A stretch of 62,960 nt of DNA, counting the filler, from Octopus bimaculoides (taxonomy: Eukaryota): assembly GCF_001194135.2 (NCBI RefSeq). It is 4 parts of 4 records of this genome, joined end to end, with 100 filler letters (N's around TTAATTAATTAA, not from the genome) between each part and the next. Parts side by side here need not be neighbours in the genome. Positions count along the whole stretch, not along the records: positions 13,542 to 29,875 come from NC_068991.1; 3 more parts are not named here. One strand, 5' to 3'. Below, in pieces: positions 13,542-61,720 of the stretch. The position numbers and the translations under genes were made by a program. The notes beneath the pieces were generated by a model, which saw only the letters and a program-made list of their open reading frames with translations, made no database searches and was not told the origin of the DNA. Numbering within the stretch: the first letter of the stretch is position 1; each line of letters starts with the position of its first letter.

Positions 13542-13629
13542 TGCTGCAGCACCGCCTTTTTAGTCAAGCTAATCGACCCCAAGGATATATTCTTTATAAG
13601 CGTGGTACTTATTGAATCCTAAGCTTCGA

Positions 13630-14180
13630 GATCAACTCAGAGGTTTTCATTGAATGTTCCGAGGATTGACGATCAACTTCCTGCAATTTCCCGGGATTTC
13701 CTGGAAAATTCCGAAGATTTCATGGAAAGTTCCGAGGATTTAAGATCAGCTTCCTGGAAATTTCTGGGAATTCCCTGGAAAGTTCCGAGGGTTTTCCGGG
13801 GATTCCCTGGAAAGTTCCGAGGATTTCATGGAAAGTCCCGAGGATTTAAGATCAACTTCCTGGAAAATTTTGGGGTTTCCCTGGAAAGTTCCGAGGATCT
13901 AAGATCAACTTCCTGGAAATTTCTGGGGATTCCCTGGGAAGTTCCGATGATTTTCCGGGGGTTCCCTGGAAAGTTCCGAGTATTTCATGGAAAGTTCCGC
14001 GGGTTTCCGGGGATTTCCTGGGAGGTTCCGAGGATTTGAGAACAAATTCCTGGAAAATTCAGGGGATTCCCTGTAAGGTTCCGAGGATTTCATGGGAAGT
14101 TCCAAGGATTTAAGATCAACTTCCCGGAAAAGTCTGGGGATTCCCTGGAAAGTTCCGAGTATTTAAGATCAACTTCCCTG
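13630..14180 (+). repeat. GC-richer minisatellite, about 20-bp unit (TTCCCTGGAAAGTTCCGAGGATT) with higher-order AAGATCAACTTCC punctuation
   Basis: Direct reading; AAGATCAACTTCC variants recur near 13670, 13742, 13847, 13901, 14112, 14165. Confidence 0.85.
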
Positions 14181-15789
14181 CGCCGTAATGATTTCGCCAG
14201 TTCGCTGCGTTAGATTGTACTAAATACTGGTTTAAATGCCAGTAATTTCGGGGGAAGGTTTAAGTTGATTACGTCGATCCCAGTGCTCAACTGATACTCA
14301 TTTTATCAACCTCGGCGGATTTTGACCTCAGAACGTAAAGACGAATGAAATGCCTTTAAGTATTTTGCCCTGCGTACTAAAGATTCTGCTAGCTCGCACC
14401 CTTATATTGCTTTAAATATTAAATGCTCTAAATTACTAACCACTGTTTTCCTGAATATGCGCTGTTGAAAGTGGGATGCATCTAATACGTGCGTAGATCA
14501 CTTATGCCAATGAAAAACGGTATTGTTTCAGTCTTTCTCCGTTCTTGATGGTAGTTTACTTTTGTAGATGTGGTGTATTTCCAATTTTATACAGGCTGCT
14601 TATTCGAAATCGTACTGCAAATTGATTTTCATTTTCATTGCAGACAAAGTTCTATGCATAGTATACATGCATGTGTGTGCATGTGTGTGTGCGTTTGCGT
14701 GTGTGTGTGTGTGTATAAAATTACATATGGTCTTATTAACATTTACGTAATGACAGGTGTGTGTGTGTATCTATGTATATATACATATATATATACATAC
14801 ACTCACACAGAGAGGGAGGCATATAAATATATATATACATATATACATATATATATATATGTATATATACATATATATATATATGTATATATATTTATAT
14901 ATATATATATATANNNNNNNNNNNNNNNNNNNNNNNNNNNNNNNNNNNNNNNNNNNNNNNNNNNNNNNNNNNNNNNNNNNNNNNNNNNNNNNTATATATA
15001 TGTACATGTATATGTACCTATATATGCATACATGCATACATCTGTTAGCCATCTGCGATTATACCTTCTATATTTGTGTACGGACCAAACCATCTCCATT
15101 GAAAAGAAAATGCACGAAGCAGTCATATGCTTAATCTAAATCTCAAAATGCTGACGTGGTAATTTCTCTATAAATCACCCAGTCATTCATTTCAAGACAG
15201 CTCCATCATAAAACTAAACAGTTGGGAACCGGAGATTCCATCGGAAAATTTTCAATAACACCCTTTTCATGAGACCGGAGCTGCAGCCACGAGATAAGAT
15301 AGGATTTCTCAAGCATTGATACGTAGGGATAAAAATACGAAACGTCGGCTTTGTACAGTGAATAAAGCCAGTCAAGAAATCGTCTGCAATGATCACTATT
15401 ATGTGCCTCTGTATTATCTCTTCTTTATGAATATTTATCTCAGTTTTTTGTTGTTGCTTTTTTTTGGGCGGTGGGGTTTCGGGTCAGCAGCCTAGTATGG
15501 GGGTTATGGTGGTACTGAATTGAACAGTATAGTTTTACCTTTAATTCTCATTCATATAGTATTCGATTATAGTTTGCTTTGCAAGGTCTTTTTCGTTTTC
15601 TTTCTTTCTTTTATTTTTTCGGTTACGATCTCAGCGTACCTCTTCCATTTCTCCGTATGTCACTCTTTTCCTTTATTAATAATAATAATATGGATAAATG
15701 CTTCATAGTACTAACCGAAAATACATTTTTATGCAAAACGTTGAGCGAGATGACTCAGTAAAGGAGAGAATAAAATTAAGCCATATAAG

Positions 15790-16130
15790 AAACAACCAGC
15801 ATTCCGTCGGTTACGAAAACGAGCGTTCCAGTTGATCCGATCAACGGAATAGCCTGCTAGAGAAATTATCTGCAAGCGGCTGAGTACTCCACAGACACAT
15901 GTACCCTTCACGTAGTTCTCGGGACGAGATTCAGCGTGACACAGAAAATGGCAAGGCTGGCTCTTTAAATTACATATACGAGTCATTTTTGCCAGCTAAG
16001 TAGACAGAAACAAAATGAAATAAAGTGTCTTGCTCAAGGCGCCACCGGGTATCAAAATGCCCTACTGAGAATCAAACTAATAAGCTTGCGAACGTAGGCT
16101 GAATACGCTAACCACTAAACCACGCGCTTT
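15790..16130 (-). mobile_element. CORE-type SINE (family 4)
   Basis: Reverse complement of the 49990-50312 copy (GTTGATCGGATCAACTGGAA tail; TGTCTTGCTCAAGG core). Confidence 0.75.
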
Positions 16131-16410
16131 CAAAATTAAGCTAGATAACACGTACACCTAGACCTACACACACACACACACACACACGTACACATATTCA
16201 TGCACATATATATGCTTAAATATATGTGTATGTGTGTGTGTGTATAAGTAAAGTTAATCGCCACATCACAGTGGCTGGTCCATGTTACTACTACTAGTTT
16301 AACCCTAGGCAGATCTTCCGGGAGCTGGTTATCGGTGCAGCCCTGTTCCCTGTACATATATATTGCTGGCAGGGGAGCGAACCTCCACCAACCTCCAGCA
16401 CACGATAGGA

Positions 16411-16459
16411 TCACGAGATTGATGCAGTTTCGAGCTAGTTTGCTCATCTTCAGTCGCGA
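16411..16459 (-). ncRNA. Minimal type-I hammerhead ribozyme motif, family B (cleavage triplet mutated to AUC)
   Basis: Minus strand: TCGCGA CTGAAGA T GAGC AAACTA GCTC GAAAC TGCATCA ATC TCGTGA. Confidence 0.7.
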
Positions 16460-16661
16460 ACATCTGATCGCCAGAGAAAACGTCAGATTAACTTGATGTA
16501 GGGATTAACTTTACTTGTTAGTATAGTTACTACTCTCATCTCTTCTTGAGGTTTTACGCCTAGCTACTTTGGTTGTAGCGAATCAGTAACCGATGGTTGC
16601 TTTGTTTACAATATATTGCTGGCCGAAGCGAACTCTGACCATCTCTCTGCCGACCAGGTGT

Positions 16662-16710
16662 TTGCGATTGATGATATACAAACTAGCTCGAAACTGAGAC
16701 AGTCTCGCGG
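16662..16710 (+). ncRNA. Degenerate hammerhead ribozyme motif, family B
   Basis: TTGCGA TTGATGA T ATAC AAACTA GCTC GAAAC TGAGACA GTC TCGCGG; C3 and stem II mutated. Confidence 0.6.
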
Positions 16711-16949
16711 TCCTATCGTCTACTGGAGCATGGTAGGAGTTCACTCCCCTACCAGCAATATACATGTACAGGGTTCTGGGCTGCACCGATAACCAGCTGG
16801 CGGAAGATTTGCCTGGGGTTAAACTAGTAGTAACATGGACCAACCACTTTGATGTGTCGATTAACTTTATTCGTTAGTATAGTTACTACTCTCATCTCTT
16901 CCTGAGATTTTACAACTAGCTACTTTGCTAAAAAAACATACTCTCTTTT

Positions 16950-17515
16950 ACTCTTTTACTTGTTTCAGTCATTTGACTGCGGCCATGCTGGGGAACTGCC
17001 TGTAGTCGAGCAAATCGACCCCAGGACTTATTCTTTGTAAGCCTAGTACTTATTCTATCGGTCTCTTTTGCCGAACCGCTAAGTCACGGGAATGTAAACA
17101 CACAAGCATCGGTTGTCAAGCGAAGTTGGGGGGACAAACACAGACACAAACATAAGTACACACATACATATANNNNNNNNNNNNNNNNNNNNNNNNNNNN
17201 NNNNNNNNNNNNNNNNNNNNNNNNNNNNNNNNNNNNNNNNNNNNNNNNNNNNNNNNNNNNNNNNNNNNNNNNNNNNNNNNNNNNNNNNNNNNNNNNNNNN
17301 NNNNNNNNNNNNNNNNNNNNNNNNNNNNNNNNNNNNNNNNNNNNNNNNNNNNNNNNNNNNNATATATATATATATATATACATATATACGACGGGCTTCT
17401 TTCAGTTTCCGTCTACCAAATTAAGACACTTGCCCAAGGTGCCACGCACTGGGACTGAACCCAGAACCATGTGGTTGGTTAGCAAGCTACTTACCACACA
17501 GCCACTCCTGCGCCT
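16950..17515 (-). mobile_element. SINE family 1 (tRNA head, AAAGCCTTGTGAGTGGATTTGGTAGACGGAAACTGAAAGAAGCCCGTC central domain resembling the Meta domain, internal microsatellite, (GTAAAAGA)n tail)
   Basis: Tail at 16950-16990, head at 17430-17515; an N gap sits in the internal microsatellite. Confidence 0.85.
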
Positions 17516-18424
17516 ACGTGTATATTTATATACACATATGAATACATAGGTCAGTGTGTTAGGGTTTGTCTATATATGTATACATACACAACACATTTAC
17601 ATATACATACCTTGGAGTGTAGCACTCACGGTCGCTAGATCGTGGTTTCGATTCCCAGCCCGGCCACGTGTTTTAATCTTGAACAAAACACTTCACTTTA
17701 CGTTGCTCCAGTCCACTAGTTGTAAATGAACGATACTCCTGGGATACTGCTGGTGGGGTAGCGAAGCGTACTGTGACCAGCGATGAAAACATATCCGACA
17801 GTCTGGTTCAATGTCATGATACTGTGGTATATGTGTGTGCGTGTTGGTGTGTCTACGTCCCCGTAACTGAGCGGTTCGGCAAATGAGTCCGATTGAATAA
17901 GTGTCACGCTTTAATAAAAATGCCTGTCATCGATTATTTCGACTAGAGCCCTGAGATATGTTACACACTGCCTGAATACCAATCTTGAGAAATGAGAATT
18001 CTCAAAACCAGAAAGGAGAAAGCTAATTCGAAGACTACAGATCCAATCCATCACTGGAACTATAAATATCTGTAAAACTTTCCAAAAGTTTATCATTTAA
18101 ATACATATGAGCATGTCTAGATATGCAACTATATGCACGAGAATACATACATAAGGCAAAACATACAAATCTGCACGTATACATGCATACATACATACAT
18201 ACATACATACATACATACATACATACATACATACATACACACATACACACTGCACTCTTTTACCGACACAGTCAGGCCTGCGCATATACTCTTTTTTGTG
18301 TTGGCATACTGAGTTCACTTAAGAGATGGTTAATTCTTTCATTTCCTTTTCCACAAAATCTAAATTCACTCTTTGACTCGGTTTTTTTTTACTCTTATTC
18401 TTTTTTATCATGCTCGTTCTAATG

Positions 18425-18620
18425 GTTTATACTTCAGCGGCTATAATTAGCGATTTAGTTTCTCATTACAAGATTCCATCCGTCAATCTCAACCAGAATT
18501 CTTTACTTCCATCATCTTCAGTACGTTGCATGAATTTACCATGTAATTCCTTCTCTTCCCAATGATTTGATCCGTCTCCTATGAAGGTATTTCTGATCCT
18601 TCTCCTAGATATTCTGTAGT
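18425..18620 (-). mobile_element. R4/Dong-like LINE fragment
   Basis: Minus translation NHWEEKELHGKFMQRTEDDGSKEFWLRLTDGIL**ETKSLIIAAE matches the W..K.LHG.F...W..L....L..ETE..I.AAQ motif. Confidence 0.7.
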
Positions 18621-18765
18621 ATTTAATGCATGCTTAGGATGAAACATTTTGCGTGGTAGCAGGATGGCCTTTCAACACAAAACAATCAACTTTACGAAAC
18701 ACATGTTCACACACGCAGTTACTTATGCGCACACATGAAAACAAGGGTACGTACACATACAATGT

Positions 18766-18807
<42 letters not shown>

Positions 18808-19429
18808 NNNNNNNNNNNNNNNNNNNNNNNNNNNNNNNNNNNNNNNNNNNNNNNNNNNNNNNNNNNNNNNNNNNNNNNNNNNNNNNNNNNNNNNNNNNNN
18901 NNNNNNNNNNNNNNNNNNNNNNNNNNNNNNNNNNNNNNNNNNNNNNNNNNNNNNNNNNNNNNNNNNNNNNNNNNNNNNNNNNNNNNNNNNNNNNNNNNNN
19001 NNNNNNNNNNNNNNNNNNNNNNNNNNNNNNNNNNNNNNNNNNNNNNNNNNNNNNNNNNTATATAGGGAGAATTCACAAGAAAAAAGACGAAAACAGGTGG
19101 TGTTAACGTTCCGAGCCTACGCTCTTCCACAGAAAGGAACACAGAAAGAAACAAGGAGAGAAAATAAAGAATGTGTAGTGGCTAGCGATCTGTCATGATT
19201 AAAATGGGGTAGTTTTGGGGAAGCATTTCGTGGTATAACTTGAAAGGGATGGCACAAAGTAAACTACAAAAGACGAAACAAAGTTGCTATTGTAATTTGT
19301 ATATCTATACTTCGAGGTTCAGAGTCCTTCTTTAGTTCATTTGGAAAAAGCGGTAGTTCGAAAAAAGTTCTTTCTCAGATGTGTGGGGTAGGAAGGAGGA
19401 AGGTGGCATGCGCAGACTGGTGTTGCTAT

Positions 19430-20240
19430 AGAAACCATTCTGCCTCATATATATTTTTTTCTGTTGTTAATAACTGCATTCAATCTGTTAAGGAGGGCCT
19501 CTATGATCCTGAGATTGTCCCTGTTGGGTTGCCCTGATGGAAAATTCAAAATTCTGGGTTTGGCACTTCTTTAAGTATTTCTGCAGTACCCGTGTGCATG
19601 TGTTCTTTCGTAAGGATGTGGAATTTCCTGGTGGTGTTACCTACATTTACTGCAGACTACTTCGAATACTACATAAGCCATTGAGGACGTTTTGATGTCG
19701 TTGACAGGGCAATTGGTATGTGTGCACCCGACAATGTTATCTGCGGTATATTTTTCTGGACAGAATTTTCCTCAGGGATTAACCGGTATCCACCAATTAT
19801 ATGTTGAGTCCTTCCCTGCGGATCACATGTTGTATAGCTGCAGTTATTCTGCCGTTGAAATAGGGCAGTTCAAGGAAGCATTTTTCCGACTTAGCATTAT
19901 AGAACTTCCTCTGTCGCTAACCCACTTTCGTGTTTTGTGGATGCAGTCGTTTATTTGCAGATGGCGGATAGCCGTTGTGTGCTAAATTCTTGAGGAGCCG
20001 TGCGGCCTTGGTAGCTTTGTTAGTTGCTTCACGGCACCTGCCTCTTATGCTTTTGAACTTATTTTGCACGTATGCGTCATTGACTCTAGTAGGCAGGGCT
20101 GATTCGTAGTATACGAACAGGCGCCTACCAGCCACTTTTCTATAGAAATTTGTATAAATGGAACCTTCCTCTGTAATCTTGATTTGGAAATAATAAGATG
20201 CTCTTCACTAAACACTCACAACGGTTTAACCGTCGTGAAA
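19430..20240 (-). mobile_element. Penelope-like element fragment (RT C-terminus, linker, GIY-YIG remnant)
   Basis: KITEEGSIYTNFYRKVAGRRLFVYYESALP...LAHNGYP, then TNCPVNDIKT..AYVVFEVVCSKC and LRIIEAL...IN-like end. Confidence 0.7.
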
Positions 20241-20848
20241 CTAGGATTTGCTACACCTGAAGAGTCTCGTTATTAATCTGGAATCCGACGATGTTAGTCC
20301 AAAACTCGGATTGGGTGCTACATACATACATACATACATACATACATACATACATACATACATGGATTTTTGTACGTATGTATCTATACATATATGTGTG
20401 TGTGTATTTATATATGTGCATATGTGTGCATATATTTATATTTATATAGAGTTTTGCATGGATACGTGTAAGAATCGCATGTAAGCATTTAAATATATGC
20501 ATGTGCATGTGTGTATAGATAGATACATGCACATAAATATATCCATATATACATATACTATATATATGTGTGTGTTTGTGTGTGTGTGTGTTTGATACTC
20601 TTTATAACTGATATAATGGTGCTGGAAGAGGTAGAATGATTTGCATGTATTAATATATGCCTAAGCACATTTACTGATGTTTATGTGTGTACATACACAC
20701 ACACATACACGCATGCATATATACATACACACACACATACAAATATGTATATATGTATATGTATATATATATATGAATAGATAGTTAGATAGAAAGAGGG
20801 CGAAAGAGACAGAGGCAGACAAACAGACAGACAGACAAGCAGGCAGAC

Positions 20849-20916
<68 letters not shown>

Positions 20917-21014
20917 GGGCCGAAAGACAGATAGACGGGCGGACGGACGGACGGACAGACAGATATTTCGCACATCTAATATATCCGAGATCTGTATAGT
21001 CTTTCACTGGATTC

Positions 21015-21087
<73 letters not shown>
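21015..21087 (+). repeat. (AGT)n microsatellite
   Basis: Direct reading. Confidence 0.95.
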
Positions 21088-21088
<1 letters not shown>

Positions 21089-21489
21089 CAACAGCAGCGG
21101 CAGCAGCTTAATATATACGTATGTCTAAAGACGAAGCTGCCGAAGATGGTGAACAGAGAAACGACGTGATTACGCTATTTGCTGTCTCTACGTAACACAG
21201 TTCATCTTTACTTCTTCAACGCTATTTTTTTTTATCTTCATTTATTATCTTCATTTTCCTCTTCATTTTATTAATTTTTTTTTTTTTATCATTACTTGCC
21301 ATTTTCATTTTTAAACTTTATTCTTATTCTCTGACGAAGAAGCTTCCACCCTATCAGGGCTGCTGAAACCTTTCATAGCTGTCATCTTGTTTTACCTGTT
21401 TCATTACTGATATATTCCTCATTAATGTATTCTTAGAATGTTACACATATTTAAAATAACAATGAAGTATATATCATCTTTTATCTTTT

Positions 21490-21720
21490 ACTGGTTTCAA
21501 TCATTTAACAGCAACCATGCTGGGGCACACCGCCTTCAAGGGTTTTAGTCGAACAAATTGACTCCAGGATTTACTTTTTAAAGCCTGGTACTTATTCTAT
21601 CGGGCTCTTTTGCCGAACCACTAATGCTACGAGGAGATAAGCACAACAGTACCGGTTGTCAAAAGCCATGGTGGGAAAACAAACACAGACACAAATACAA
21701 ACATGCATAGACATAGACAT
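21490..21720 (-). mobile_element. SINE family 1, 3' half, degenerate
   Basis: Similar to 16970-17160. Confidence 0.7.
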
Positions 21721-21962
21721 TTATGTATATATATATATATATATATAGTTTATGAGAGGTAATGGTTTCAACAAGACCCAAAGGTGTCAGGTAATGTTGA
21801 GTAAGTGTTATGGACAGACTATTGTTAAGCTCCAGGTTCGGTGATTATGCGAATGAGGAGTCCAACGTAAGTCATATATTAGCATGCATATATATAAAAA
21901 TTTAACAGAATGAGATAAAAATCTAAAGCTGTGAAAGATTTCAGGACATTTATAAAGAGAAG

Positions 21963-22010
21963 GTCTTACAGCTGTTTCCGGGATATTTTATATATCCCTT
22001 CATCGGAGAC
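21963..22010 (-). ncRNA. Minimal hammerhead motif, family A (U4C core mutation)
   Basis: Minus strand: GTCT CCGATGA A GGGATAT ATAAA ATATCCC G GAAAC AGCT GTA AGAC. Confidence 0.6.
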
Positions 22011-22193
22011 GGTGCGGGCAAATGGTTAAGCAAAAGTTATTCTAGAGAAGATATAAGATAGAGAGTGAAGCGGAGGAATAAAAACAGACGTGAGATATGC
22101 AGGGATATCTCACGTCTGTTTTCATTCCTCCACTTCACTCTCTATTTCATATCTTCTTATCGAATAACTATTGCTTAACCATTTTCTCGCACC

Positions 22194-22241
22194 GTCTCTG
22201 AAGAAGGGATATATATAATATCCCAGAAACAGGTGTAAGAC
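22194..22241 (+). ncRNA. Minimal hammerhead motif, family A (core intact)
   Basis: GTCT CTGAAGA A GGGATAT ATATA ATATCCC A GAAAC AGGT GTA^AGAC; predicted cut after 22237. Confidence 0.7.
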
Positions 22242-22295
22242 CTCTTTATAAATGTTATGAAATCTTTCACAGCCTTGGATTTTTATCTTATTCTG

Positions 22296-22335
<40 letters not shown>

Positions 22336-23330
22336 TGAGGGTGATAAATTGAATATTATTTTCAATTTAAAACCAGTGGTCTAGCACATAAAAAATCTGA
22401 TAATTCAGAAAAATTGTATTACATGCGTATAAGATGAACCACAAATGATTTTACATAAGTAAGAGAGTTAATGGCGAAACCTGGTACACAATTAATTCTT
22501 TATTTTTATATATTTTCCATTTCGTCCTGCCCGCCTGAACTCTGTGTATNNNNNNNNNNNNNNNNNNNNNNNNNNNNNNNNNNNNNNNNNNNNNNNNNNN
22601 NNNNNNNNNNNNNNNNNNNNNNNNNNNNNNNNNNNNNNNNNNNNNNNNNNNNNNNNNNNNNNNNNNNNNNNNNNNNNNNNNNNNNNNNNNNNNNNNNNNN
22701 NNNNNNNNNNNNNNNNNNNNNNNNNNNNNNNNNNNNNNNNNNNNNNNNNNNNNNNNNNNNNNNNNNNNNNNNNNNNNNNNNNNNNNNNNNNNNNNNNNNN
22801 NNNNNNNNNNNNNNNNNNNNNNNNNNNNNNNNNNNNNNNNNNNNNNNNNNNNNNNNNNNNNNNNNNNNNNNNNNNNNNNNNNNNNNNNNNNNNNNNNNNN
22901 NNNNNNNNNNNNNNNNNNNNNNNNNNNNNNNNNNNNNNNNNNNNNNNNNNNNNNNNNNNNNNNNNNNNNNNNNNNNNNNNNNNNNNNNNNNNNNNNNNNN
23001 NNNNNNNNNNNNNNNNNNNNNNNNNNNNNNNNNNNNNNNNNNNNNNNNNNNNNNNNNNNNNNNNNNNNNNNNNNNNNNNNNNNNNNNNNNNNNNNNNNNN
23101 NNNNNNNNNNNNNNNNNNNNNNNNNNNNNNNNNNNNNNNNNNNNNNNNNNNNNNNNNNNNNNNNNNNNNNNNNNNNNNNNNNNNNNNNNNNNNNNNNNNN
23201 NNNNNNNNNNNNNNNNNNNNNNNNNNNNNNNNNNNNNNNNNNNNNNNNNNNNNNNNNNNNNNNNNNNNNNNNNNNNNNNNNNNNNNNNNNNNNNNNNNNN
23301 NNNNNNNNNNNNNNNNNNNNNNNNNNNNNN

Positions 23331-23612
23331 GTATTTATGTATTTATGGGTTTCAGCCAAGTGGCTGTGGTCATGCTGGAGCACCACCGTGATTTTCCGTC
23401 TTTATGCTGTGCTCTCTTCACGTTCCTTGCATGGCTCTTCTCCACTTGATATAGTCCAATCAAGAGTTTTGATGGCACATCTGGTGTATAAGAGAATTTG
23501 ACATCGCTGCCCTAAACTGTGTCTCATTTCGAGCCATTGGTTCGTCTGGTATCGTGGAGAGGAAAGCGTCGAGTTTTGTCTTGAAGACATCCGTGTCTTG
23601 GAGGTCTCTCAG
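23331..23612 (-). mobile_element. CR1-type LINE extreme 3' end (ORF2 C-terminus, stop 23460-23462, 3' UTR stem-loop, octamer tail)
   Basis: LRDLQDTDVFKTKLDAFLSTIPDEPMARNETQFRAAMSNSLIHQMCHQNS*, followed by GGTGCTCCAGCATGACCACAGCCACTTGGCTGAAAC and (ATAAATAC)n. Confidence 0.75.
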
Positions 23613-24120
23613 TAACTTCTGTTATGACTCTATGGAATTGATTGTGTAGTCCCTTGTTGCGTAATTCTTCTTCATGTCCTTTTTGTACTTGTGTGCTTTT
23701 CCTTTCTTCTCTGCTTTCAATTCTCCCTCATTTCTAACTGACACTAGCAAGGTTTCCTTTACTTTGGGCTAGGTATCTCATTAAGCTCTCGAGTCCGATA
23801 CGTAAGTCTTCCAAGCTTATCAGTCCTCTTCCCCCATTTGCTCTCATCATGTATAGGCGATCAGTGTCTGCCCGTGGATGATGGGCTCCATGTTTCGTTA
23901 GGAGCTTTCTTGATTTCCTGTCCATCTCCTTTAGCCCCTCCTCTGTCCACTTCAGGATTCTAGCGCCATACCGAATTAATGCGCGCGAGTTTATAGCCGA
24001 AATTATGTTACTGGTATTCAGCTTTGAAGCCAGTATTTTTCTCACTCTCTGCAGGTACTTTCTTTTCTTTCATGTCGTTGTTTTTGATTCCATCTGCCTC
24101 AAGTATTCCCAGATATTTAT
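23613..24120 (-). mobile_element. R4/Dong-like LINE fragment (RT end/thumb)
   Basis: KYLGILEADGIK...ILASKLNTSNIISAINS...KWTEEGLKEMDRKSRKLLTKHGAHHPRADTDRLYMMRANGGRGL. Confidence 0.8.
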
Positions 24121-24629
24121 AGCTAGATTGAGATTATTATTATTATTGAGTGAGAAAACAGTGCATGCCATCAAAGTGACACTGGGGTACAATTATACGA
24201 AGCCCAATATACACATCATAACTACCCGTCTGATAAGGGTACACCAGGCACATGCATCACAACCACGTGTGCGCGATATGGTGATCTCGTATCAAGATAA
24301 ACAGTGCATGAACTTGCAGGTGGAGTTCAGTTAGAATTTTCTTCAGGTTGAGTAGCCCATTCCGCTCAAAAGGTCCCTGAATATGGTTTGTTTAAGGTGA
24401 TGAACGAAACACCTATGTTTCTAGAGGTGAATCATTCAAACCTCAAAGACTTCTTCTCAACATGTGGCTATGATGCTCCTCCACTACTTCTGCTCGTGAT
24501 CAGAGATGCACATATCGTCATCCACTAAGGGACATGCTCAACTGGTTAAGGTCAAACAACTGATAAGCAAATCTGTGGTGTTGAGCAGAATATTTACTGT
24601 AGCCCATCCTGTTTTACTGTAGCCCATAC

Positions 24630-24630
<1 letters not shown>

Positions 24631-24694
<64 letters not shown>

Positions 24695-24713
24695 TAATAA
24701 TAAAAATAATAAC

Positions 24714-24787
<74 letters not shown>

Positions 24788-24799
24788 CAATAATAATAA
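24631..24799 (+). repeat. (AAT)n microsatellite running into a gap
   Basis: Direct reading. Confidence 0.95.
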
Positions 24800-25689
24800 N
24801 NNNNNNNNNNNNNNNNNNNNNNNNNNNNNNNNNNNNNNNNNNNNNNNNNNNNNNNNNNNNNNNNNNNNNNNNNNNNNNNNNNNNNNNNNNNNNNNNNNNN
24901 NNNNNNNNNNNNNNNNNNNNNNNNNNNNNNNNNNNNNNNNNNNNNNNNNNNNNNNNNNNNNNNNNNNNNNNNNNNNNNNNNNNNNNNNNNNNNNNNNNNN
25001 NNNNNNNNNNNNNNNNNNNNNNNNNNNNNNNNNNNNNNNNNNNNNNNNNNNNNNNNNNNNNNNNNNNNNNNNNNNNNNNNNNNNNNNNNNNNNNNNNNNN
25101 NNNNNNNNNNNNNNNNNNNNNNNNNNNNNNNNNNNNNNNNNNNNNNNNNNNNNNNNNNNNNNNNNNNNNNNNNNNNNNNNNNNNNNNNNNNNNNNNNNNN
25201 NNNNNNNNNNNNNNNNNNNNNNNNNNNNNNNNNNNNNNNNNNNNNNNNNNNNNNNNNNNNNNNNNNNNNNNNNNNNNNNNNNNNNNNNNNNNNNNNNNNN
25301 NNNNNNNNNNNNNNNNNNNNNNNNNNNNNNNNNNNNNNNNNNNNNNNNNNNNNNNNNNNNNNNNNNNNNNNNNNNNNNNNNNNNNNNNNNNNNNNNNNNN
25401 NNNNNNNNNNNNNNNNNNNNNNNNNNNNNNNNNNNNNNNNNNNNNNNNNNNNNNNNNNNNNNNNNNNNNNNNNNNNNNNNNNNNNNNNNNNNNNNNNNNN
25501 NNNNNNNNNNNNNNNNNNNNNNNNNNNNNNNNNNNNNNNNNNNNNNNNNNNNNNNNNNNNNNNNNNNNNTTATTATTATGGCCGCCATACTTTAAAGTCA
25601 CTGAAATTTGGAGCTTCGTAAGTTGAAATAGTATCTGTAATCTTTTCGGCCAAAAAATTTTGGGCCTTGTGCCTAGAGTAGACAAGAAT

Positions 25690-25885
25690 CATTAGCAGCC
25701 AGGCGAAATAATTAGCGACATTTCGTCTGTGTTTATGTTCTGAGTTCAAATTCCGCCGAGGTCGATTTTGCCTTTCATCCTTTCGGGGTCGATAAATTAA
25801 GTACTAGTTGTGTACTGGAGTCGATCTAATCGACTGGCCCCTTCCCCCAAAATTTCGGGCTTCGAGCCTAGAATAGAAAACAAAT
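25690..25885 (+). mobile_element. SINE family 2
   Basis: TTCCGCCGAGGTCGA...CTTTCATCCTTTCGGGGTCGATAAATTAAGTAC, CpGs retained. Confidence 0.85.
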
Positions 25886-26264
25886 ATTATTTTGATAGTC
25901 GTTATTCTTGGTGTTATCATAATTGTCGTTACTGAAATACGAATACGTTATTTTTTAAGTTTGATTTTTTGCAGCTATTTTCTAATTTGGAGTTCATTTT
26001 ACTTTGGTCAGATTTTGTCATTTCTGTGGGTTTTTAAAATTTTTTTCGGTTTTGTTCTGTTGTTTTTTTGTCGTTTTCTTTGCTTCTGCTTATCAAAATT
26101 CAGAAGAGTGATGGGTGGGAATCGGTATGGTTTTTGTCATTTTTTTTTTCTGTTTTATATTTCATGATCATTATAATGAGAATGCGAAAGGAGAGGTGGA
26201 CAGAAAGGGGAAAGTAGGGGAAAATGAGAAATGCAGCAACATTCATGACAATGAAGTGCAACGT

Positions 26265-26321
<57 letters not shown>

Positions 26322-27013
26322 CGACGACGACAATGATGACGATGGTGACTATGATGATGAACAAGAGGATGATGGTAACGATAATAACGCTGATGGTAAT
26401 TGAGAGGGAATTACAAAAAAAATGTACACACGTTGGTTAATCTATTGTTGTTGCTGTTGTTAATGTCAAGCAGATCTTTAAGATTTGTTAGTTTATATTT
26501 TTTTTTCTCACAGTTTTGCAACTACTTCATTTTGTTATTTAATTCTTTGACACTATTTCTCACTCTCTCCCTAAATTATTCAATCTCTCTCTTATCATGT
26601 ATNNNNNNNNNNNNNNNNNNNNNNNNNNNNNNNNNNNNNNNNNNNNNNNNNNNNNNNNNNNNNNNNNNNNNNNNNNNNNNNNNNNNNNNNNNNNNNNNNN
26701 NNNNNNNNNNNNNNNNNNNNNNNNNNNNNNNNNNNNNNNNNNNNNNNNNNNNNNNNNNNNNNNNNNNNNNNNNNNNNNNNNNNNNNNNNNNNNNNNNNNN
26801 NNNNNNNNNNNNNNNNNTATATATATATATATATATGCATACAGACATGCATTCATGTATATACAATGTGAACATGTGTAATATATGTGTTTATATTATG
26901 TAAGGATTCTTTGCGTGTGCATATGTGTGTGAGTGTGTGTGTGTATAAATATGTATGTGTGCGTATATGCTTGTGTGTATACAGGTATGCATGTATGTAC
27001 ATACACACACACA

Positions 27014-27045
<32 letters not shown>

Positions 27046-27709
27046 CTGTAATCTATATACATTGCAGATATATATACACATGCATACATACATACATACA
27101 TACATACATACATACATACATACATACATACACCTTTATAAAAACATCCGTATAAGTTCTCAGTTTTTATAAATGTTTATCTACATTTTTTTCTTATTTA
27201 ATGGATGCTAACACCAATTACGTATATTTGACAGAATGAAAGGCATGAATCTGAATATCGAAACACACACATACAAACATACACACAAGCTCACACACTC
27301 ACACATACATATACACACAAATACACGCATGCACATGCATGCTCTCTTGCATACAAACACGAACATAAAATCCCTTTGTCTCTGCTTCACACACATTCGC
27401 ATGCCTATGTATGTGTATACATATGTCTATGAGTGCGTACATGTGTACGTTTTCATGTGTGTGCGTGTGTGTATATAAACATGCTATCTTTCCATTCTAG
27501 ATTATTCTCCGGCAATTTTGTAAAAAAAAATTTAATTATGAGATTTAGGTGTGTTGTAAAGATGGTTGTTTCGAATCCGCCTAATCTCTGGCTTGTTCTC
27601 AATAAATGAATTTTTGGTCAAATGTCTGTACCATTTCCTCAGTTCGATTACGTCTCTGAATGGAATTTCGCACACTTTATCTCTGCGTGACTGTATGGTA
27701 AAAAGGTGC

Positions 27710-27857
27710 AGGTGTGGCTGAGTGGTAAGTAGCTTGCTTACGAACCACATGGTTCCAATTTCAGTTCTACTGCGTGACACCTTGAGCATGTGTCTTCTAC
27801 TATAGCCTGGAGCCGACCAAAGCCTTGAGAGTGGATTTGGTGGACGGAAACTGAAAG

Positions 27858-27941
<84 letters not shown>

Positions 27942-28315
27942 ATGTACGCATGTATGTGTGTACTTATGTATATATGTATGTATGCATATATGCATGTGCG
28001 TGTGTCTGTGTCTATGTTTGTCCCCCACCACCACTTAACAACCGGTGTTGGTGTGTTTACGTCCGCATAACCTAGCGGTTCGGCAAAAGACCTATACAAG
28101 AAGTACCAGACTATAAAAGATATAAGTCCTGGGGTCCATTTGTTCCACTAAAACCCTTCAAAGTGGTGCCCCAGCAAAAGAGAGTGATAGAATAGGTACC
28201 AAACTATAAAGAAAAATAAATACTCAGGTTTCAGTCGCACTAATCGACTAAACCCGTTTCAGGTGATGCTCCTGCATGGCCGCAATCCAATGACTGCGAC
28301 AAATAAAAGATAAAC
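27710..28315 (+). mobile_element. SINE family 1 with expanded internal (TG)n
   Basis: tRNA-like head at 27710, central domain at 27815-27857, (TG)n 27858-27938, tail near 28260-28315. Confidence 0.8.
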
Positions 28316-28604
28316 AACAAAAGATGTCTAAATTTGTTTCATAGTATGTGGCATAATGTGTTGCAATTGCCCCTTCTTGTAAATGCAGAGTGAGGCTACT
28401 GGAAGATGTTGTACTTGTTTGGCCACGCCAATGTTTTCGCAGAGGCAGTTTCTGGAAATGTTGATAAAAATGAATTCGGAAAATTTATTGTCCCAAAGGA
28501 AGTATACGTTTCTAACACGTACAAACGAGAACAAAATTTTTTTAAGGATTAACTTACAGCATAGTCGTGTTTTCAGTATAGCATCTAAAAGAAAGGCCGT
28601 TTTA

Positions 28605-29850
28605 TCAGGTTGAGTAAAAAGTAAGCAACGTTTTGAACCATAAAGAATTTTTACCGGATTTTTGCAGAGTTTTGATAAGCACTTTTTTTTTGCAGTTGTC
28701 TGACAATACAGACATAGACTTGCCCAAATGCATCAATAAATTAACATTGATATTTTTTCACCGTTGTTACATTAATATGAAACGGAACTGTCAAAGTGCG
28801 ATATTCGAGCAATTTTGCAATTCAACTTCAAAAATGGAAGGAAAGCAACTGAAACTGCTCGCGATATCAACAAAACGTTTCATGTGGAAACGGCCAGTGA
28901 CTGGTTAGTTCGAAAATGGTTTAAACGATTTCACAGTGGAATCCTGAGCCTTAAAAATCGTGAGCGTAGTGGACGCCCATCTATCATCGATGACGGTCAA
29001 TTAAAGACCGTTATTGAGAAAGTTCCACATAAAACTACTCGCAAATTGGCCAAAGAGCTTCAAGTTAGCCAGAAAACTGCCTGCAACCATTTGCATGCGA
29101 TCGGAAAATCAAAATAGCTCGACAAATGCGTACCACACAATTTCAATGAAAATCAGAAAATGTGCAGATATGAAATTTACTCATCGCTTCTTCTCCGTAA
29201 CCAGACCGATCCATTTCTCGACCATATTGCAACTTGTGATGAAAAGTGGATTCTGTACAATAATAAAAAACGTTCTTCGTAGTAGTTGGACCGAAATGAA
29301 GCATCGAAAACCTTCCATAAACCCGAGCTCTTCGAAAAGGTTATAGTGACTGTTTGGTGGTGTACTGCTAGGCTCATCCACTATAACTTCTTAAAATCCA
29401 GAAAAACCATTACTGCAGAAACATATTGCCATGAAATTACCAAAATGAACGAAGAACTGCTACTCCTCCATCCCAGACTGGTCAACAGAACAGGGTAAAT
29501 CATTCTTCATAACAATGCTCGACCACACGTTTCACTAATGATGCTCCAGAAGTTGAGGGTTATTTCCCAGACTTTTCTCCTACCGACTACCACTTTCTCA
29601 AGCACCTTGATGGTTTTCTACGTGAGTAGGAGTTAAAAAGACAAACCTATACTGAAAGTCGTTCAAAGAGTTCAGCAGCTCCAGAACTCCAGGTTTTTAT
29701 GTTACCGAAAAAAAAAAAACGTTTAACTCGTTGGCAAAAATGTGTTGATTCTAATGGTACTTACTTTGATGAACAAAATTTCCACATTGTTGAAATATAT
29801 TGTGATGAATCTCATGTTTCAAAACGTTGTTTACTTTTTACTCAGCCTGG
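28605..29850 (+). mobile_element. Full-length mariner (DD34D-type) with TIRs and TA target duplication; transposase pseudogenised
   Basis: TA|TCAGGTTGAGTAAAAAGTAAGCAACGTTTTGAA ... TTCAAAACGTTGTTTACTTTTTACTCAGCCTGG|TA. ATG 28777; motifs RSGRP, (W)VPH, TCDEKW, HNNARPH, FSPTDYHF, with stops and frameshifts. Confidence 0.9.
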
Positions 29851-29875
29851 TATATATATATATATATATATATAT

Positions 29876-43151: not shown

Positions 43152-44460
43152 GTAAACAATAAGAGAAAAAAACAATTGTTTTTAATTTTTTTTTTTTTTT
43201 ACTTGTTTCAGTCATTTGACTGCGGCCATGCTGGAGCACCACCTTTTAGTCGAGCAAATTGACCCCAGGACTTATTCTTTGTAAGCCTAGTACTTATTCT
43301 ATCGAACTGTTTTTGCCGAACTGCTAAGTTACGGGGAACGTACACACACCAGCATCTGATGTCAAGCGATGTTGGTGGGGACAAACACAGACACACACAC
43401 ACACATATATATACACACATATGACAGGCTTCTTTCAGTTTCCGTCTACCAAATCCACTCACAAAGCTTTGGTTGGCCCAAGACTATTATTTCTACAGCT
43501 GAGTTAACTGGAGCAATGTGAAATAAAGTGTCTTGCTCAAGGACACAACACACAGCCTGGTCCAAGAATCAAACTCACTATCTCATGATCGGGAGCCTGA
43601 CACTCTCTCTCTATTTATATATATATATGTATTTATATGTAGATCGTTGCCAGCGCCGCCAGACTGGCTCCCATGCAGGGAGCATGTAAAAACACCTTTT
43701 GAGTGTGGTTGTTGCCAGAACCACCTGACTGGCCCTCGTGCCAGTGGCACATTAAAAGCACCCACTACACTCTCAAAGTGGTTGGCATTAGGAAAGGCAT
43801 CCATCTGTAGAAACTTTGCCAGATCAGATTGGAGCCTGGTGTAGCCATCTGGTTCACCAATCCTCAGTCAAACCGTCCAACCGATGCCAGCATGGAAAGC
43901 GAACGTTAAACTATGATGATGATGTATGTGTATATATATATATGTATATGTGTGTGTGTATATATATGTATATATATATATATATAATGCGAGAGAGTTA
44001 GGGGTTGAGGATTCAACCCACTAAGGGATAGTATCTATCCAATATACTGCTGGGAGGGTACCCAATTATTATTACACTAGTGTTATACCAAGTGCAATAA
44101 TTGGGAGCAGGTAAGGGGGGGGGGGGNNNNNNNNNNNNNNNNNNNNNNNNNNNNNNNNNNNNNNNNNNNNNNNNNNNNNNNNNNNNNNNNNNNNNNNNNN
44201 NNNNNNNNNNNNNNNNNNNNNNNNNNNNNNNNNNNNNNNNNNNNNNNNNNNNNNNNNNNNNNNNNNNNNNNNNNNNNNNNNNNNNNNNNNNNNNNNNNNN
44301 NNNNNNNNNNNNNNNNNNNNNNNNNNNNNNNNNNNNNNNNNNNNNNNNNNNNNNNNNNNNNNNNNNNNNNNNNNNNNNNNNNNNNNNNNNNNNNNNNNNN
44401 NNNNNNNNNNNNNNNNATATATATATATATATATTCACACACACACACATATACATACAT

Positions 44461-49862: not shown

Positions 49863-49989
49863 GTTGGGGCTTTTTTTCATTATTTTTTTAAAACTCGGTG
49901 CTCCAGCATGGCTGCAGTCAAATGACTGAAACAAGTAAAAGAGTATTATTTGCAGACATTTTTATCTCATTATGTACAGTCTCATGGTG

Positions 49990-61399: not shown

Positions 61400-61720
61400 T
61401 CTTTTACTTGTTTCAGTCATTTGACTGCGGCCATGCTGGAGCACCGCCTTTTTAGTCTAATCAAATCGACCCCCCCCTAGTACTTATTCTATCGTTCTCT
61501 TTAGCCGAACCGCTAAGTTACGGGGACGTAAACACACCAGCATCGGTTGTCAAGCGATGTTGGGGGGACAAACACAGACACACAAACATACACACACACA
61601 TGCATATATATATATATATATATATACATATATATTATACGACGGCTTCTTTCAGTTTCCGTCTACCAAATCCACTCGTAGGGCTTTGGTCGGCCCGAGG
61701 CTATAGTAGAAGACACTTGC
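61400..61720 (-). mobile_element. SINE family 1, truncated by scaffold end
   Basis: Tail and central domain close to consensus. Confidence 0.85.

What the first reader, a model, noticed from the sequence alone, without database searches (positions are those of the whole stretch)
23331..23462. CR1 LINE 3' UTR shares its tail with SINE family 1, with a compensatory stem change
Seen: the LINE tail GGTGCTCCAGCATGACCA-CAGCC-ACTT-GGCTG-AAAC aligns with the SINE tail GGTGCTCCAGCATGGCCG-CAGTC-AAAT-GACTG-AAAC (for example 43205-43243, 49900-49935, 61410-61447). The 5-bp stem swaps C-G for T-A. Both end in 8-nt repeats, (ATAAATAC)n versus (GTAAAAGA)n. Known: CR1 ends in octamer repeats, and stringent LINEs mobilise SINEs through a shared 3' stem-loop. 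Inference: this identifies the CR1-type partner of the dominant SINE.
Basis: partly seen in the sequence, partly recalled or inferred. Interest (0 to 1): 0.7.

Follow-up and report, generated by a model that had tools for sequence, protein, structure and literature searches.

The report
Octopod LINE and SINE share 3' tail
A short, truncated copy of a jumping gene (a CR1-like LINE) in an octopus-type genome ends in the same two small RNA hairpins as the abundant short repeat (SINE) nearby. This is the ordinary way a SINE borrows a LINE's copying machinery, though this particular copy is probably a sister of the real helper.

Summary
On the minus strand, 23384->23349 reads exactly as quoted, followed by (ATAAATAC)x2.1, which is cut by an assembly gap. 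Three SINE copies in the piece carry the homologous box. The stem difference C-G (LINE) versus U-A (SINE) is consistent: 9 of 9 LINE-type tails against 3 of 3 SINE copies.

- **Genuine LINE end.** Eight contigs carrying relatives have the same box just downstream of the ORF2 stop. They include an intact 984-aa endonuclease plus reverse transcriptase ORF and an Argonauta hians copy.
- **Two hairpins.** The box folds as two adjacent hairpins, not one, with covariation in both.
- **Two elements, not one.** The "LINE" in the window is two elements. Only 23331-23612 (282 bp, about the last 50 codons plus the 3' UTR) belongs to the tailed family. The reverse-transcriptase-like frames upstream (23608-24132) are an unrelated LINE.
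- **Probably not the direct partner.** Relatives ending in (GTAAAAGA)n or (TAAAAGA)n match the SINE better (91% against 83%). The window copy's octamer differs, so it is probably a sister subfamily.
- **Clade not proven.** "CR1" is plausible (hairpins plus octamer, C-terminal domain) but was not shown by phylogeny.

This is a new member of a well-known kind of system.

The parts
23331..23346 (-). Terminal octamer repeat (ATAAATAC)x2 of the LINE copy. It is cut off by the assembly gap, so the true length is unknown.
   Evidence: TRF period 8, 2.1 copies, 100% matches; sequence read; N run from 22550 to 23330.
23347..23352 (-). Linker AAAC + CC between hairpin 2 and the repeat. AAAC is nearly invariant in all LINE and SINE tails.
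   Evidence: Alignments A2 and A3.
23353..23366 (-). Hairpin 2: CAGCC-ACUU-GGCUG, a 5-bp stem. Pair 4 is C-G here and U-A in the SINE.
   Evidence: Minimum-free-energy fold; pair counts.
23368..23387 (-). Hairpin 1: GGU.GUGC-UCCA-GCAU.G.ACC, stems of 3 + 4 bp with G bulges and loop NCCA.
   Evidence: Minimum-free-energy fold, z = -2.98. RNAalifold predicts it on its own. Pair 3 varies as U-A, U-G and C-G.
23388..23459 (-). Rest of the 3' UTR between the stop codon and the tail box. It has no similarity to the SINE.
   Evidence: Alignment A1; translation.
23460..23612 (-). Last ~50 codons of ORF2 plus the stop (23462-23460) of the tailed LINE ('LINE-B'), 5'-truncated at about 23612: ..LLRDLQDTDVFKTKLDAFLSTIPDEPMARNETQFRAAMSNSLIHQMCHQNS*
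   Evidence: phmmer against 1.84e9 proteins gave 28 hits at E<1e-3, the sequences read lying at or near ORF C-termini. tblastn with P0123 residues 928-973 hit 23612-23481 at 61% identity, E 2e-10, and no other part of P0123 was found in the window.
23608..24132 (-). Unrelated LINE ('LINE-A'): an internal ORF2 fragment with frameshifts and stops. It is not part of the tailed element and abuts it on the same strand.
   Evidence: 166 homologues. The family continues ..KPLHGQF..WDWLKKG..LGTARIICKVLEIK*. No tail box in L001.
16943..17150 (-). SINE family-1 copy a, the best preserved. Tail box at 17000->16962, (GTAAAAGA)x2.2 at 16960->16943.
21477..21695 (-). SINE family-1 copy b (decayed). Tail ..GGCGGTGTGCCCCAGCATGGTTGCTGTTAAATGATTGAAAC CA GTAAAAGA TAAAAGA.
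28007..28314 (+). SINE family-1 copy c (partial dimer, decayed). Tail box 28262-28300.

Best explanation
Positions 23331-23612 (minus strand) are a 282-bp, 5'-truncated dead copy of a non-LTR retrotransposon. Its family has an endonuclease plus reverse transcriptase ORF2 and looks like the CR1 group. I call it LINE-B.

The RNA of this family ends in a conserved module of about 39 nt: two adjacent small hairpins, then AAAC, then a subfamily-specific short tandem repeat. By analogy with stringent-type LINEs (eel UnaL2, amniote CR1, R2), the element's own reverse transcriptase would recognise the hairpins. It would then prime on the nicked target through the terminal repeat.

The abundant ~200-nt SINE in the same genome carries the same module at its 3' end. 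Its RNA can therefore be copied in trans by this LINE family.

What is shown: the homology, the position at the LINE's 3' end, the fold and the covariation. What is inferred: recognition by the reverse transcriptase and mobilisation in trans.

Within the family, the direct helper of the SINE is more likely a subfamily ending in (GTAAAAGA)n or (TAAAAGA)n than the (ATAAATAC)n subfamily seen in the window.
For: - **Tail box follows the ORF2 stop in relatives.** It does so in L002 (intact 984-aa ORF with Exo_endo_phos and RVT_1), L003, L004 (Argonauta hians), L005 and L006, and L007/8 and L009.
- **Specific to these ends.** A fuzzy scan of the window and the six loci then held (L001-L006) found the box only at these LINE ends, at SINE family-1 ends, and once as a tail-only insertion (L004:19102-19143). 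It found none in the unrelated LINE locus L001.
- **Same fold each time.** The window tail and L002-L006 each fold on their own into the same two hairpins. The decayed L009 keeps hairpin 1 but folds its 3' part differently.
- **Pair counts on 12 tails.** 90.9% of cells are paired, against 24-43% when partners are slid. Three pairs show changes on both sides. The covariation score was reached by 0 of 500 shuffles. RNAalifold predicts hairpin 1 independently.
- **Variable loop, kept stem.** Loop 2 varies in sequence and length (ACUU, UGCG, ACU, AACUC and others) while its stem is kept.
- **Discrete module boundary.** SINE/LINE homology starts exactly at hairpin 1 and runs to the repeat. Upstream there is none.
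- **Which LINE is closest.** The in-piece SINE majority box is 91% identical to L003, 89% to L002 and L006, and 83% to the window copy. L003 ends in AGAGTAAAAGAGTA, the SINE's octamer.
- **Same architecture in a crab.** A relative in Petrolisthes cinctipes has two hairpins plus (TTCAAGTA)n.
- **Literature.** Hairpin plus microsatellite is the accepted CR1 3' recognition structure (PMC8665684). SINE/LINE tail sharing with compensatory changes has been described for bivalve CR1 and L2 (PMC4824008).
Against: - No experiment supports the mechanism.
- The window copy is dead: truncated, with a diverged ORF remnant only 61% identical to P0123.
- Its octamer differs from the SINE's.
- The intact relatives come from contigs whose species I could not determine, apart from Argonauta hians, so co-residence of an active partner with the SINE in this genome is not shown.
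- Only three SINE tails were available, two of them decayed.
- The C-G to U-A difference is a single inherited event.
- The structure string was derived from these same sequences, which inflates the slid-partner control.
- RNAalifold did not recover hairpin 2 in the consensus once decayed copies were included.
Confidence: 0.8

Rival explanations
1. The window's own (ATAAATAC)n subfamily is the direct helper of the SINE. On this view the octamer does not matter for trans-mobilisation.
For: The window copy has the same hairpin architecture and AAAC linker. It lies in the same genome as the SINE copies.
Against: The octamer differs. The box is 83% identical to the SINE majority, against 89-91% for L002, L003 and L006. 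Relatives with TAAAAGA-type repeats exist. In tested stringent LINEs the terminal repeat is shared by the partners and takes part in priming (Kajikawa and Okada 2002, cited in PMC3747384).
Confidence: 0.15
2. The direction is reversed. The LINE family acquired the module from the SINE, or both took it from a third element, by template switching. The LINE would then not be the original source of the tail.
For: Reverse-transcriptase template switching between SINE and LINE RNAs is a proposed route of tail exchange (PMC4824008). The window itself shows a LINE-A/LINE-B fusion that could be such a chimera.
Against: The box is present in diverged LINE subfamilies (ORF2 C-termini 60-70% identical) with different repeats, and in Argonauta. 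The two-hairpin-plus-octamer architecture also occurs in a crab relative. The module is therefore old in the LINE lineage. Whichever the direction, sharing still implies trans-mobilisation.
Confidence: 0.07
3. The similarity reflects a chance juxtaposition. A SINE 3' end inserted, or was assembled, next to a LINE fragment, so the LINE itself has no such tail.
For: The copy is short, sits at a contig edge next to a gap, and abuts an unrelated LINE.
Against: The ORF2 C-terminal codons run on into the UTR and box, as in eight other contigs. The stem carries the LINE-type C-G and not the SINE-type U-A. No SINE body lies upstream.
Confidence: 0.03

Closest known systems
Eel UnaL2 / UnaSINE1 (L2 clade, stringent type; Kajikawa and Okada 2002, as reviewed in PMC3747384)
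   Same: SINE and LINE share a 3' stem-loop followed by a short tandem repeat. The stem structure is conserved, and the repeat serves in priming.
   Different: UnaL2 has one functional stem-loop and a (TGTAA)n pentamer. Here there are two adjacent hairpins and mostly 7-8-nt repeats. UnaL2 was tested experimentally, and this pair was not.
Amniote CR1 3' end (hairpin + ATTCTRTG octamer; Suh 2015, as cited in PMC8665684) and turtle or passerine CR1-mobilised SINEs
   Same: A single endonuclease plus reverse transcriptase ORF2, a hairpin directly upstream of an 8-nt microsatellite, no poly(A), and frequent extreme 5' truncation.
   Different: Nearly all amniote CR1s share one octamer. The octopod family shows a different repeat unit in almost every subfamily sampled: ATAAATAC, AATTA, GTAAAAGA, CATTAAAA, AATAAAAG, TTCAA. 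The sequence of the box is unrelated.
Bivalve SINE/LINE pairs: BivaV-SINE2 and BivaCORE-SINE1 with CR1-14_CGi (PMC4824008); CR1-Zenon, L2 and Nimb partners (PMC11481361)
   Same: Molluscan tRNA-type SINEs share 35-61 nt of 3' tail with CR1-group LINEs. Stem-loops and compensatory changes were used as the argument there too.
   Different: Those are a different class of molluscs with different sequences. No cephalopod pair was reported in the papers I could search.

Membership tests
SINE/LINE pair with a shared 3' tail (stringent-type recognition) | Sequence homology confined to the 3' ends of a SINE and a LINE | tested here: met
   Repeat family D10; alignments A1-A3; blastn of the SINE tail against LINE tails, E 3e-8 and 1e-7. 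Homology starts at hairpin 1.
SINE/LINE pair with a shared 3' tail (stringent-type recognition) | The tail is the regular 3' end of the LINE, downstream of ORF2, in independent copies | tested here: met
   L002-L009 all carry it after, or running through, the ORF2 stop. P0123 is an intact 984-aa endonuclease plus reverse transcriptase ORF.
SINE/LINE pair with a shared 3' tail (stringent-type recognition) | Conserved stem-loop supported by compensatory changes | tested here: met
   90.9% of cells paired against 24-43% when slid; 3 pairs changed on both sides; covariation reached by 0 of 500 shuffles; individual folds. Caveats: few independent events, and the structure was derived from the same sequences.
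SINE/LINE pair with a shared 3' tail (stringent-type recognition) | Partners share the same terminal tandem repeat | tested here: not met
   Not met for the window copy: ATAAATAC against the SINE's GTAAAAGA. Met by relatives L003 (GTAAAAGA), L006 (AATAAAAG) and L007/8 (TAAAAGA).
SINE/LINE pair with a shared 3' tail (stringent-type recognition) | The LINE protein mobilises the SINE RNA in trans, dependent on the tail | not testable with these tools
   This needs a retrotransposition assay.
CR1 clade of non-LTR retrotransposons | Single ORF2 with an N-terminal AP-type endonuclease and a reverse transcriptase, and no RNase H | tested here: met
   Met for the relative P0123: Exo_endo_phos, Exo_endo_phos_2 and RVT_1 only. 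The window copy keeps only about 50 codons.
CR1 clade of non-LTR retrotransposons | 3' end is a hairpin plus a microsatellite (typically an octamer), not poly(A) | tested here: met
   definition from PMC8665684. The feature is shared by the whole CR1 group (L2, Rex1 and others), so it does not pin down the clade.
CR1 clade of non-LTR retrotransposons | Reverse transcriptase domain groups with CR1 references in a phylogeny | not tested
   No labelled reference set (Repbase or RTclass1) was available. The PDB holds only L1 ORF2p and R2, matched at E about 1e-18 to 1e-7.
CR1 clade of non-LTR retrotransposons | CR1-type C-terminal domain (..LEYC..WSP..LE.VQRR..SLE.RR.R.D.I..) | tested here: inconclusive
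   P0123 against a CR1-type C-terminal domain: 33% identity, E 5e-24. Against an L2-type domain: 25% identity, E 7e-9. Both comparators were typed from my memory. Zenon, Rex1 and Jockey were not compared.
tRNA-derived SINE | tRNA-like head with Pol III A and B boxes | tested here: inconclusive
   ARAGORN found none, and Rfam gave no tRNA hit even at E up to 1. The copies are decayed. The short length (~200 nt), common 5' start and multiple copies fit a SINE.

The most novel reading that the evidence does not exclude
Octopods harbour a CR1-group LINE lineage that keeps one double-hairpin recognition module while swapping the terminal microsatellite between subfamilies. At least six different units were seen in nine copies. 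The major octopus SINE expansion would then be a parasite of just one of these subfamilies. The repeat unit would act as a second specificity code that lets sister LINEs coexist, and would decide which of them pays for the SINE.
Probability: 0.3. Interest if true: 0.5.

Novelty: new member of a known kind. Interest (0 to 1): 0.35.

Why it matters
SINEs are among the largest repeat classes in Octopus genomes. Their bursts have been linked, controversially, to genome rearrangement and neural gene expression (PMC8967140, PMC13282606, PMC12988792). None of the papers I could search names the autonomous element that drove them. Attention has gone to an RTE LINE expressed in the brain (PMC9115989).

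Pinning one abundant SINE family to a CR1-like LINE family with a defined two-hairpin tail gives a concrete, testable partner. It also gives a simple 39-nt probe for dating and counting both elements. Mechanistically it adds nothing new to the shared-tail model.

Tried and rejected
- **Word-indexed protein search** with the 53-aa ORF2 remnant found no candidates. The full HMMER scan was needed.
- **Exact-product look-up** of a window ORF, meant to find the source contig, gave nothing.
- **Scan of JGI metagenome contigs** for the tail pattern gave 0 hits, so no extra SINE copies could be harvested. The SINE consensus rests on three in-piece tails.
- **Rfam at E up to 1** returned only microsatellite-driven, sub-threshold miRNA-like matches. 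There was no known family for the tail and no tRNA for the SINE head. ARAGORN found none.
- **PDB sequence search** returned only L1 ORF2p and R2 at weak scores, useless for clade assignment.
- **One LINE of about 800 bp** was considered and rejected. tblastn of the downstream LINE-A protein found no continuation, and P0123 matches only 23612-23481.
- **The tail as an inserted SINE end** was considered and rejected (see rival explanations).
- **Literature search** for an octopus SINE/LINE pair was negative. There is no entry in the 2013 table of pairs (PMC3747384), and nothing in the octopus repeat papers read. The Albertin 2015 paper was not held. Repbase could not be consulted, so the pair may already be catalogued there.

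Full report
**What is at the coordinates**

The piece 13542-29875 is a gapped scaffold of seven contigs. The finding sits at the low-coordinate edge of contig 23331-24799, and the element lies on the minus strand.

Read 5'->3' on that strand, the last 57 nt are GGT GGTGCTCCAGCATGACCACAGCCACTTGGCTGAAAC CC ATAAATAC ATAAATAC. The sequence then meets a run of 781 N. TRF confirms an 8-nt period with 2.1 perfect copies. The gap makes the true length of the array unknowable.

The finding's upper coordinate, 23462, is the first base of a stop codon. That codon closes a 53-codon frame: QKLLRDLQDTDVFKTKLDAFLSTIPDEPMARNETQFRAAMSNSLIHQMCHQNS*.

**SINE copies inside the piece**

The piece has its own copies of the same ~200-nt repeat:
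- 17150->16943 (-)
- 21695->21477 (-)
- 28007-28314 (+, partly dimeric)
- tail-less fragments at 17847-17948 (+) and 13613->13561 (-)

Together they make about 6% of the 14 kb of real sequence. The best copy ends ...GGCAGTTCCCCAGCATGGCCGCAGTCAAATGACTGAAAC AA GTAAAAGA GTAAAAGA G.

The repeat finder grouped the two minus-strand SINE tails and the LINE tail into one family without being told to (D10). Short sub-patterns of the box occur 2-3 times, against 0.03 expected by chance.

**The "LINE" in the window is two elements**

Upstream of the 53-codon remnant, the minus strand carries reverse-transcriptase-downstream frames: SYKYLGILEADG..RKILASKLN..GGRGLISLEDL..LHNQFHRVITEV. These have 166 homologues.

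In that family ("LINE-A") the protein continues after ..LHGQF..TEV.. with WDWLKKG.. for about 250 more residues and ends ..LGTARIICKVLEIK*. In the window it stops at about 23608. The frame then switches to LLRDLQ..FKTKLDAFLSTIPDEP, which is the extreme C-terminus of a different ORF2.

Three results fix the boundary:
- tblastn with the downstream part of LINE-A finds nothing elsewhere in the piece.
- tblastn with the 984-aa relative of the second family (P0123) matches only 23612-23481, at 61% identity and E 2e-10.
- The LINE-A locus L001 has no tail box.

The tailed element ("LINE-B") is therefore a 282-bp, 5'-truncated copy. Extreme 5' truncation is normal for LINEs.

LINE-A and LINE-B lie head-to-tail on one strand. 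Either LINE-B inserted into LINE-A, or the reverse transcriptase switched templates. The 3' flank is in the gap, so this cannot be decided.

**Is the tail really the LINE's own?**

The word-indexed search found nothing for the 53-aa remnant. A full HMMER scan of 1.84 billion proteins gave 28 hits at E<1e-3. In the ten sequences read, the match lies at or near the C-terminus of the ORF. The best long hit, P0123, is an intact 984-aa protein with Exo_endo_phos and RVT_1 domains.

On P0123's contig, ORF2 stops and 7 nt later comes GGTGGTGCCCCAGCATGGCCGCAGCCCTAGCGCTGAAAC, followed by (AATTA)n. Searching with P0123's C-terminal 267 residues gave closer relatives, including a protein of the octopod Argonauta hians. 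Every contig fetched carries the box just after the stop:

| Locus | Source | Terminal repeat |
|---|---|---|
| L003 | ENA contig | AGAGTAAAAGAGTA |
| L004 | Argonauta hians | (CATTAAAA)n |
| L005 | ENA contig | (CATTAAAA)n |
| L006 | ENA contig | (AATAAAAG)n |
| L007/L008 | Logan reads, decayed | (TAAAAGA)n |
| L009 | Logan reads | (TTCAA)n |

The distance from the conserved ..SNSL.HQ motif to the box ranges from about 35 to 93 nt. The box is thus a stable feature of this LINE family across subfamilies and at least two octopod lineages. "A SINE end landed here by chance" is rejected.

The window shares a second SINE family with Argonauta at about 80% identity, which places the window in an octopod. 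My recollection is that both SINEs are the abundant Octopus ones. That is memory, not a test.

**Structure**

The window tail folds into two adjacent hairpins, not one (z = -2.98):
- Hairpin 1: GGU.GUGC-UCCA-GCAU.G.ACC
- Hairpin 2: CAGCC-ACUU-GGCUG

L002-L006 each give the same two hairpins as their minimum-free-energy fold. The decayed L009 keeps hairpin 1 but folds its 3' part differently.

On an alignment of 12 tails (9 LINE-type, 3 SINE), 90.9% of cells form standard pairs. The figure is 24-43% when the partners are slid by 1-3 columns. Three pairs show changes on both sides, and no shuffle out of 500 reached the covariation score.

The informative pairs are:
- Hairpin 1, pair 3: C-G five times, U-G five times, U-A twice. 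This is a wobble-mediated switch among LINE copies themselves.
- Hairpin 2, pair 4: C-G in all nine LINE-type tails, U-A in all three SINE copies.
- Hairpin 2, pair 5: U-A once, in L009.

Loop 2 varies freely in sequence and length. Loop 1 (NCCA), the bulged Gs and the AAAC linker are nearly invariant. RNAalifold recovers hairpin 1 by itself, but not hairpin 2 once decayed copies are included.

Three caveats apply. The structure was read off these same sequences. The SINE-specific U-A is one inherited event. Only three SINE tails were available.

A crab relative (Petrolisthes cinctipes, L010) has an unrelated sequence but the same layout: two adjacent hairpins and then (TTCAAGTA)n.

**How it most likely works**

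Shown: the LINE family ends in a conserved double hairpin, AAAC and a short tandem repeat. The SINE carries the same module. Homology begins exactly at hairpin 1.

Inferred from established work on stringent-type LINEs (R2, UnaL2 and CR1, as reviewed in PMC3747384 and PMC8665684): the LINE's reverse transcriptase binds the hairpins of its own RNA, and primes reverse transcription at the nicked target with help from the terminal repeat. A Pol III SINE transcript carrying the module is accepted in trans.

**Which LINE is the partner**

The majority box of the three in-piece SINE tails is GGCGGTGCCCCAGCATGGCCGCAGTCAAATGACTGAAAC. Leaving out loop 2, its identity is:
- 91% to L003
- 89% to L002 and L006
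- 83% to the window copy

L003 also ends in the SINE's own GTAAAAGA unit, and L006 and L007/8 end in close variants. The window copy ends in ATAAATAC. The window element is thus best seen as a sister subfamily. The direct helper is probably a TAAAAGA-type subfamily.

I could not show that such a subfamily lives in the same genome, because the species of the ENA and Logan contigs are unknown to me.

**Comparison with known systems**

This is the classical shared-tail SINE/LINE relationship (Ohshima and Okada; Kajikawa and Okada 2002). In molluscs the same argument, including compensatory changes, has been made for bivalve SINEs with CR1, CR1-Zenon, L2 and Nimb partners (PMC4824008, PMC11481361).

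Hairpin plus octamer is the accepted CR1 3' signature (PMC8665684). That signature, the endonuclease plus reverse transcriptase ORF2 without RNase H, and the C-terminal domain all fit the CR1 group.

P0123's C-terminal domain aligns end to end with a CR1-type sequence (33% identity, E 5e-24). It aligns less well with an L2-type sequence (25% identity, E 7e-9). Both comparators were typed from my memory, so this is a lead only. No reverse transcriptase phylogeny with labelled references was possible. The PDB offers only L1 and R2 at weak scores. "CR1-type" is plausible but not proven.

**Novelty and verdict**

I found no paper naming the partner of an octopus SINE. The 2013 table of pairs has no octopus entry (PMC3747384), and recent octopus repeat papers list CR1 and unclassified SINEs without pairing them. 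Repbase could not be checked.

The finding is a correct and useful annotation-level result, a new member of a very well-known kind. One mildly unusual trait is that nearly every subfamily sampled has a different terminal repeat behind the same double hairpin.

Interest is 0.35.

Noticed in passing
window 23608-24132 (-): Internal ORF2 fragment of an unrelated LINE family, fused head-to-tail on the same strand to the 282-bp tailed LINE end. It is either a nested insertion or a reverse-transcriptase template-switch chimera. The 3' flank is hidden in the N gap 22550-23330.
   Followed up: partly
window 27705-27858 (+) and 17389-17515 (-): A second SINE family with a tRNA-like head (..GGCTGAGTGGTAAG..GGTTCCAATTTCAG..), ending GGAAACTGAAAG followed by (TG)n. 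It is about 80% identical to two copies in the Argonauta hians locus L004 (1533-1629 and 16201-16297). Its tail is different, so it presumably has a different LINE partner.
   Followed up: partly
window 28007-28314 (+): This SINE family-1 copy is a partial dimer. The first unit breaks inside hairpin 1 at about 28177, restarts at body position ~80, and then runs to a complete tail.
   Followed up: partly
window 13698-14177: Tandem satellite with nested periods of 21, 32 and 53 bp, built on TTCCNGGAA palindromes (about 9 copies of the 53-mer).
   Followed up: no
window 21874-22327: Long foldback with inverted arms of 82-86 nt at 84-90% complementarity, possibly a MITE or hairpin element. It gave only sub-threshold miRNA-like Rfam matches.
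   Followed up: no
window 16289-16927: Inverted arms of 199 nt (16289-16487 / 16634-16832, 82%), plus a 79-nt direct repeat (16493-16571 / 16849-16927, 89%), just 3' of SINE copy a. This is a duplicated or rearranged block of unknown nature.
   Followed up: no
L010:2318-2382 (Petrolisthes cinctipes): A crab relative of the LINE ends in two adjacent hairpins followed by (TTCAAGTA)n. The first hairpin overlaps the ORF2 stop. The architecture matches the octopod family, but the sequence does not.
   Followed up: partly
L004:19102-19143 (-) (Argonauta hians): A tail-only insertion of about 45 nt (degenerate box plus (CATTAAAA)n) next to a GA-rich tract. It is an extreme 5' truncation of the same LINE or of a dependent element.
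   Followed up: no
window 24150-24620 (-): About 470 bp lie between a long (TTA)n array (24630-24799) and the LINE-A fragment. They have no match in the window or in any fetched locus, and their nature is unknown.
   Followed up: no
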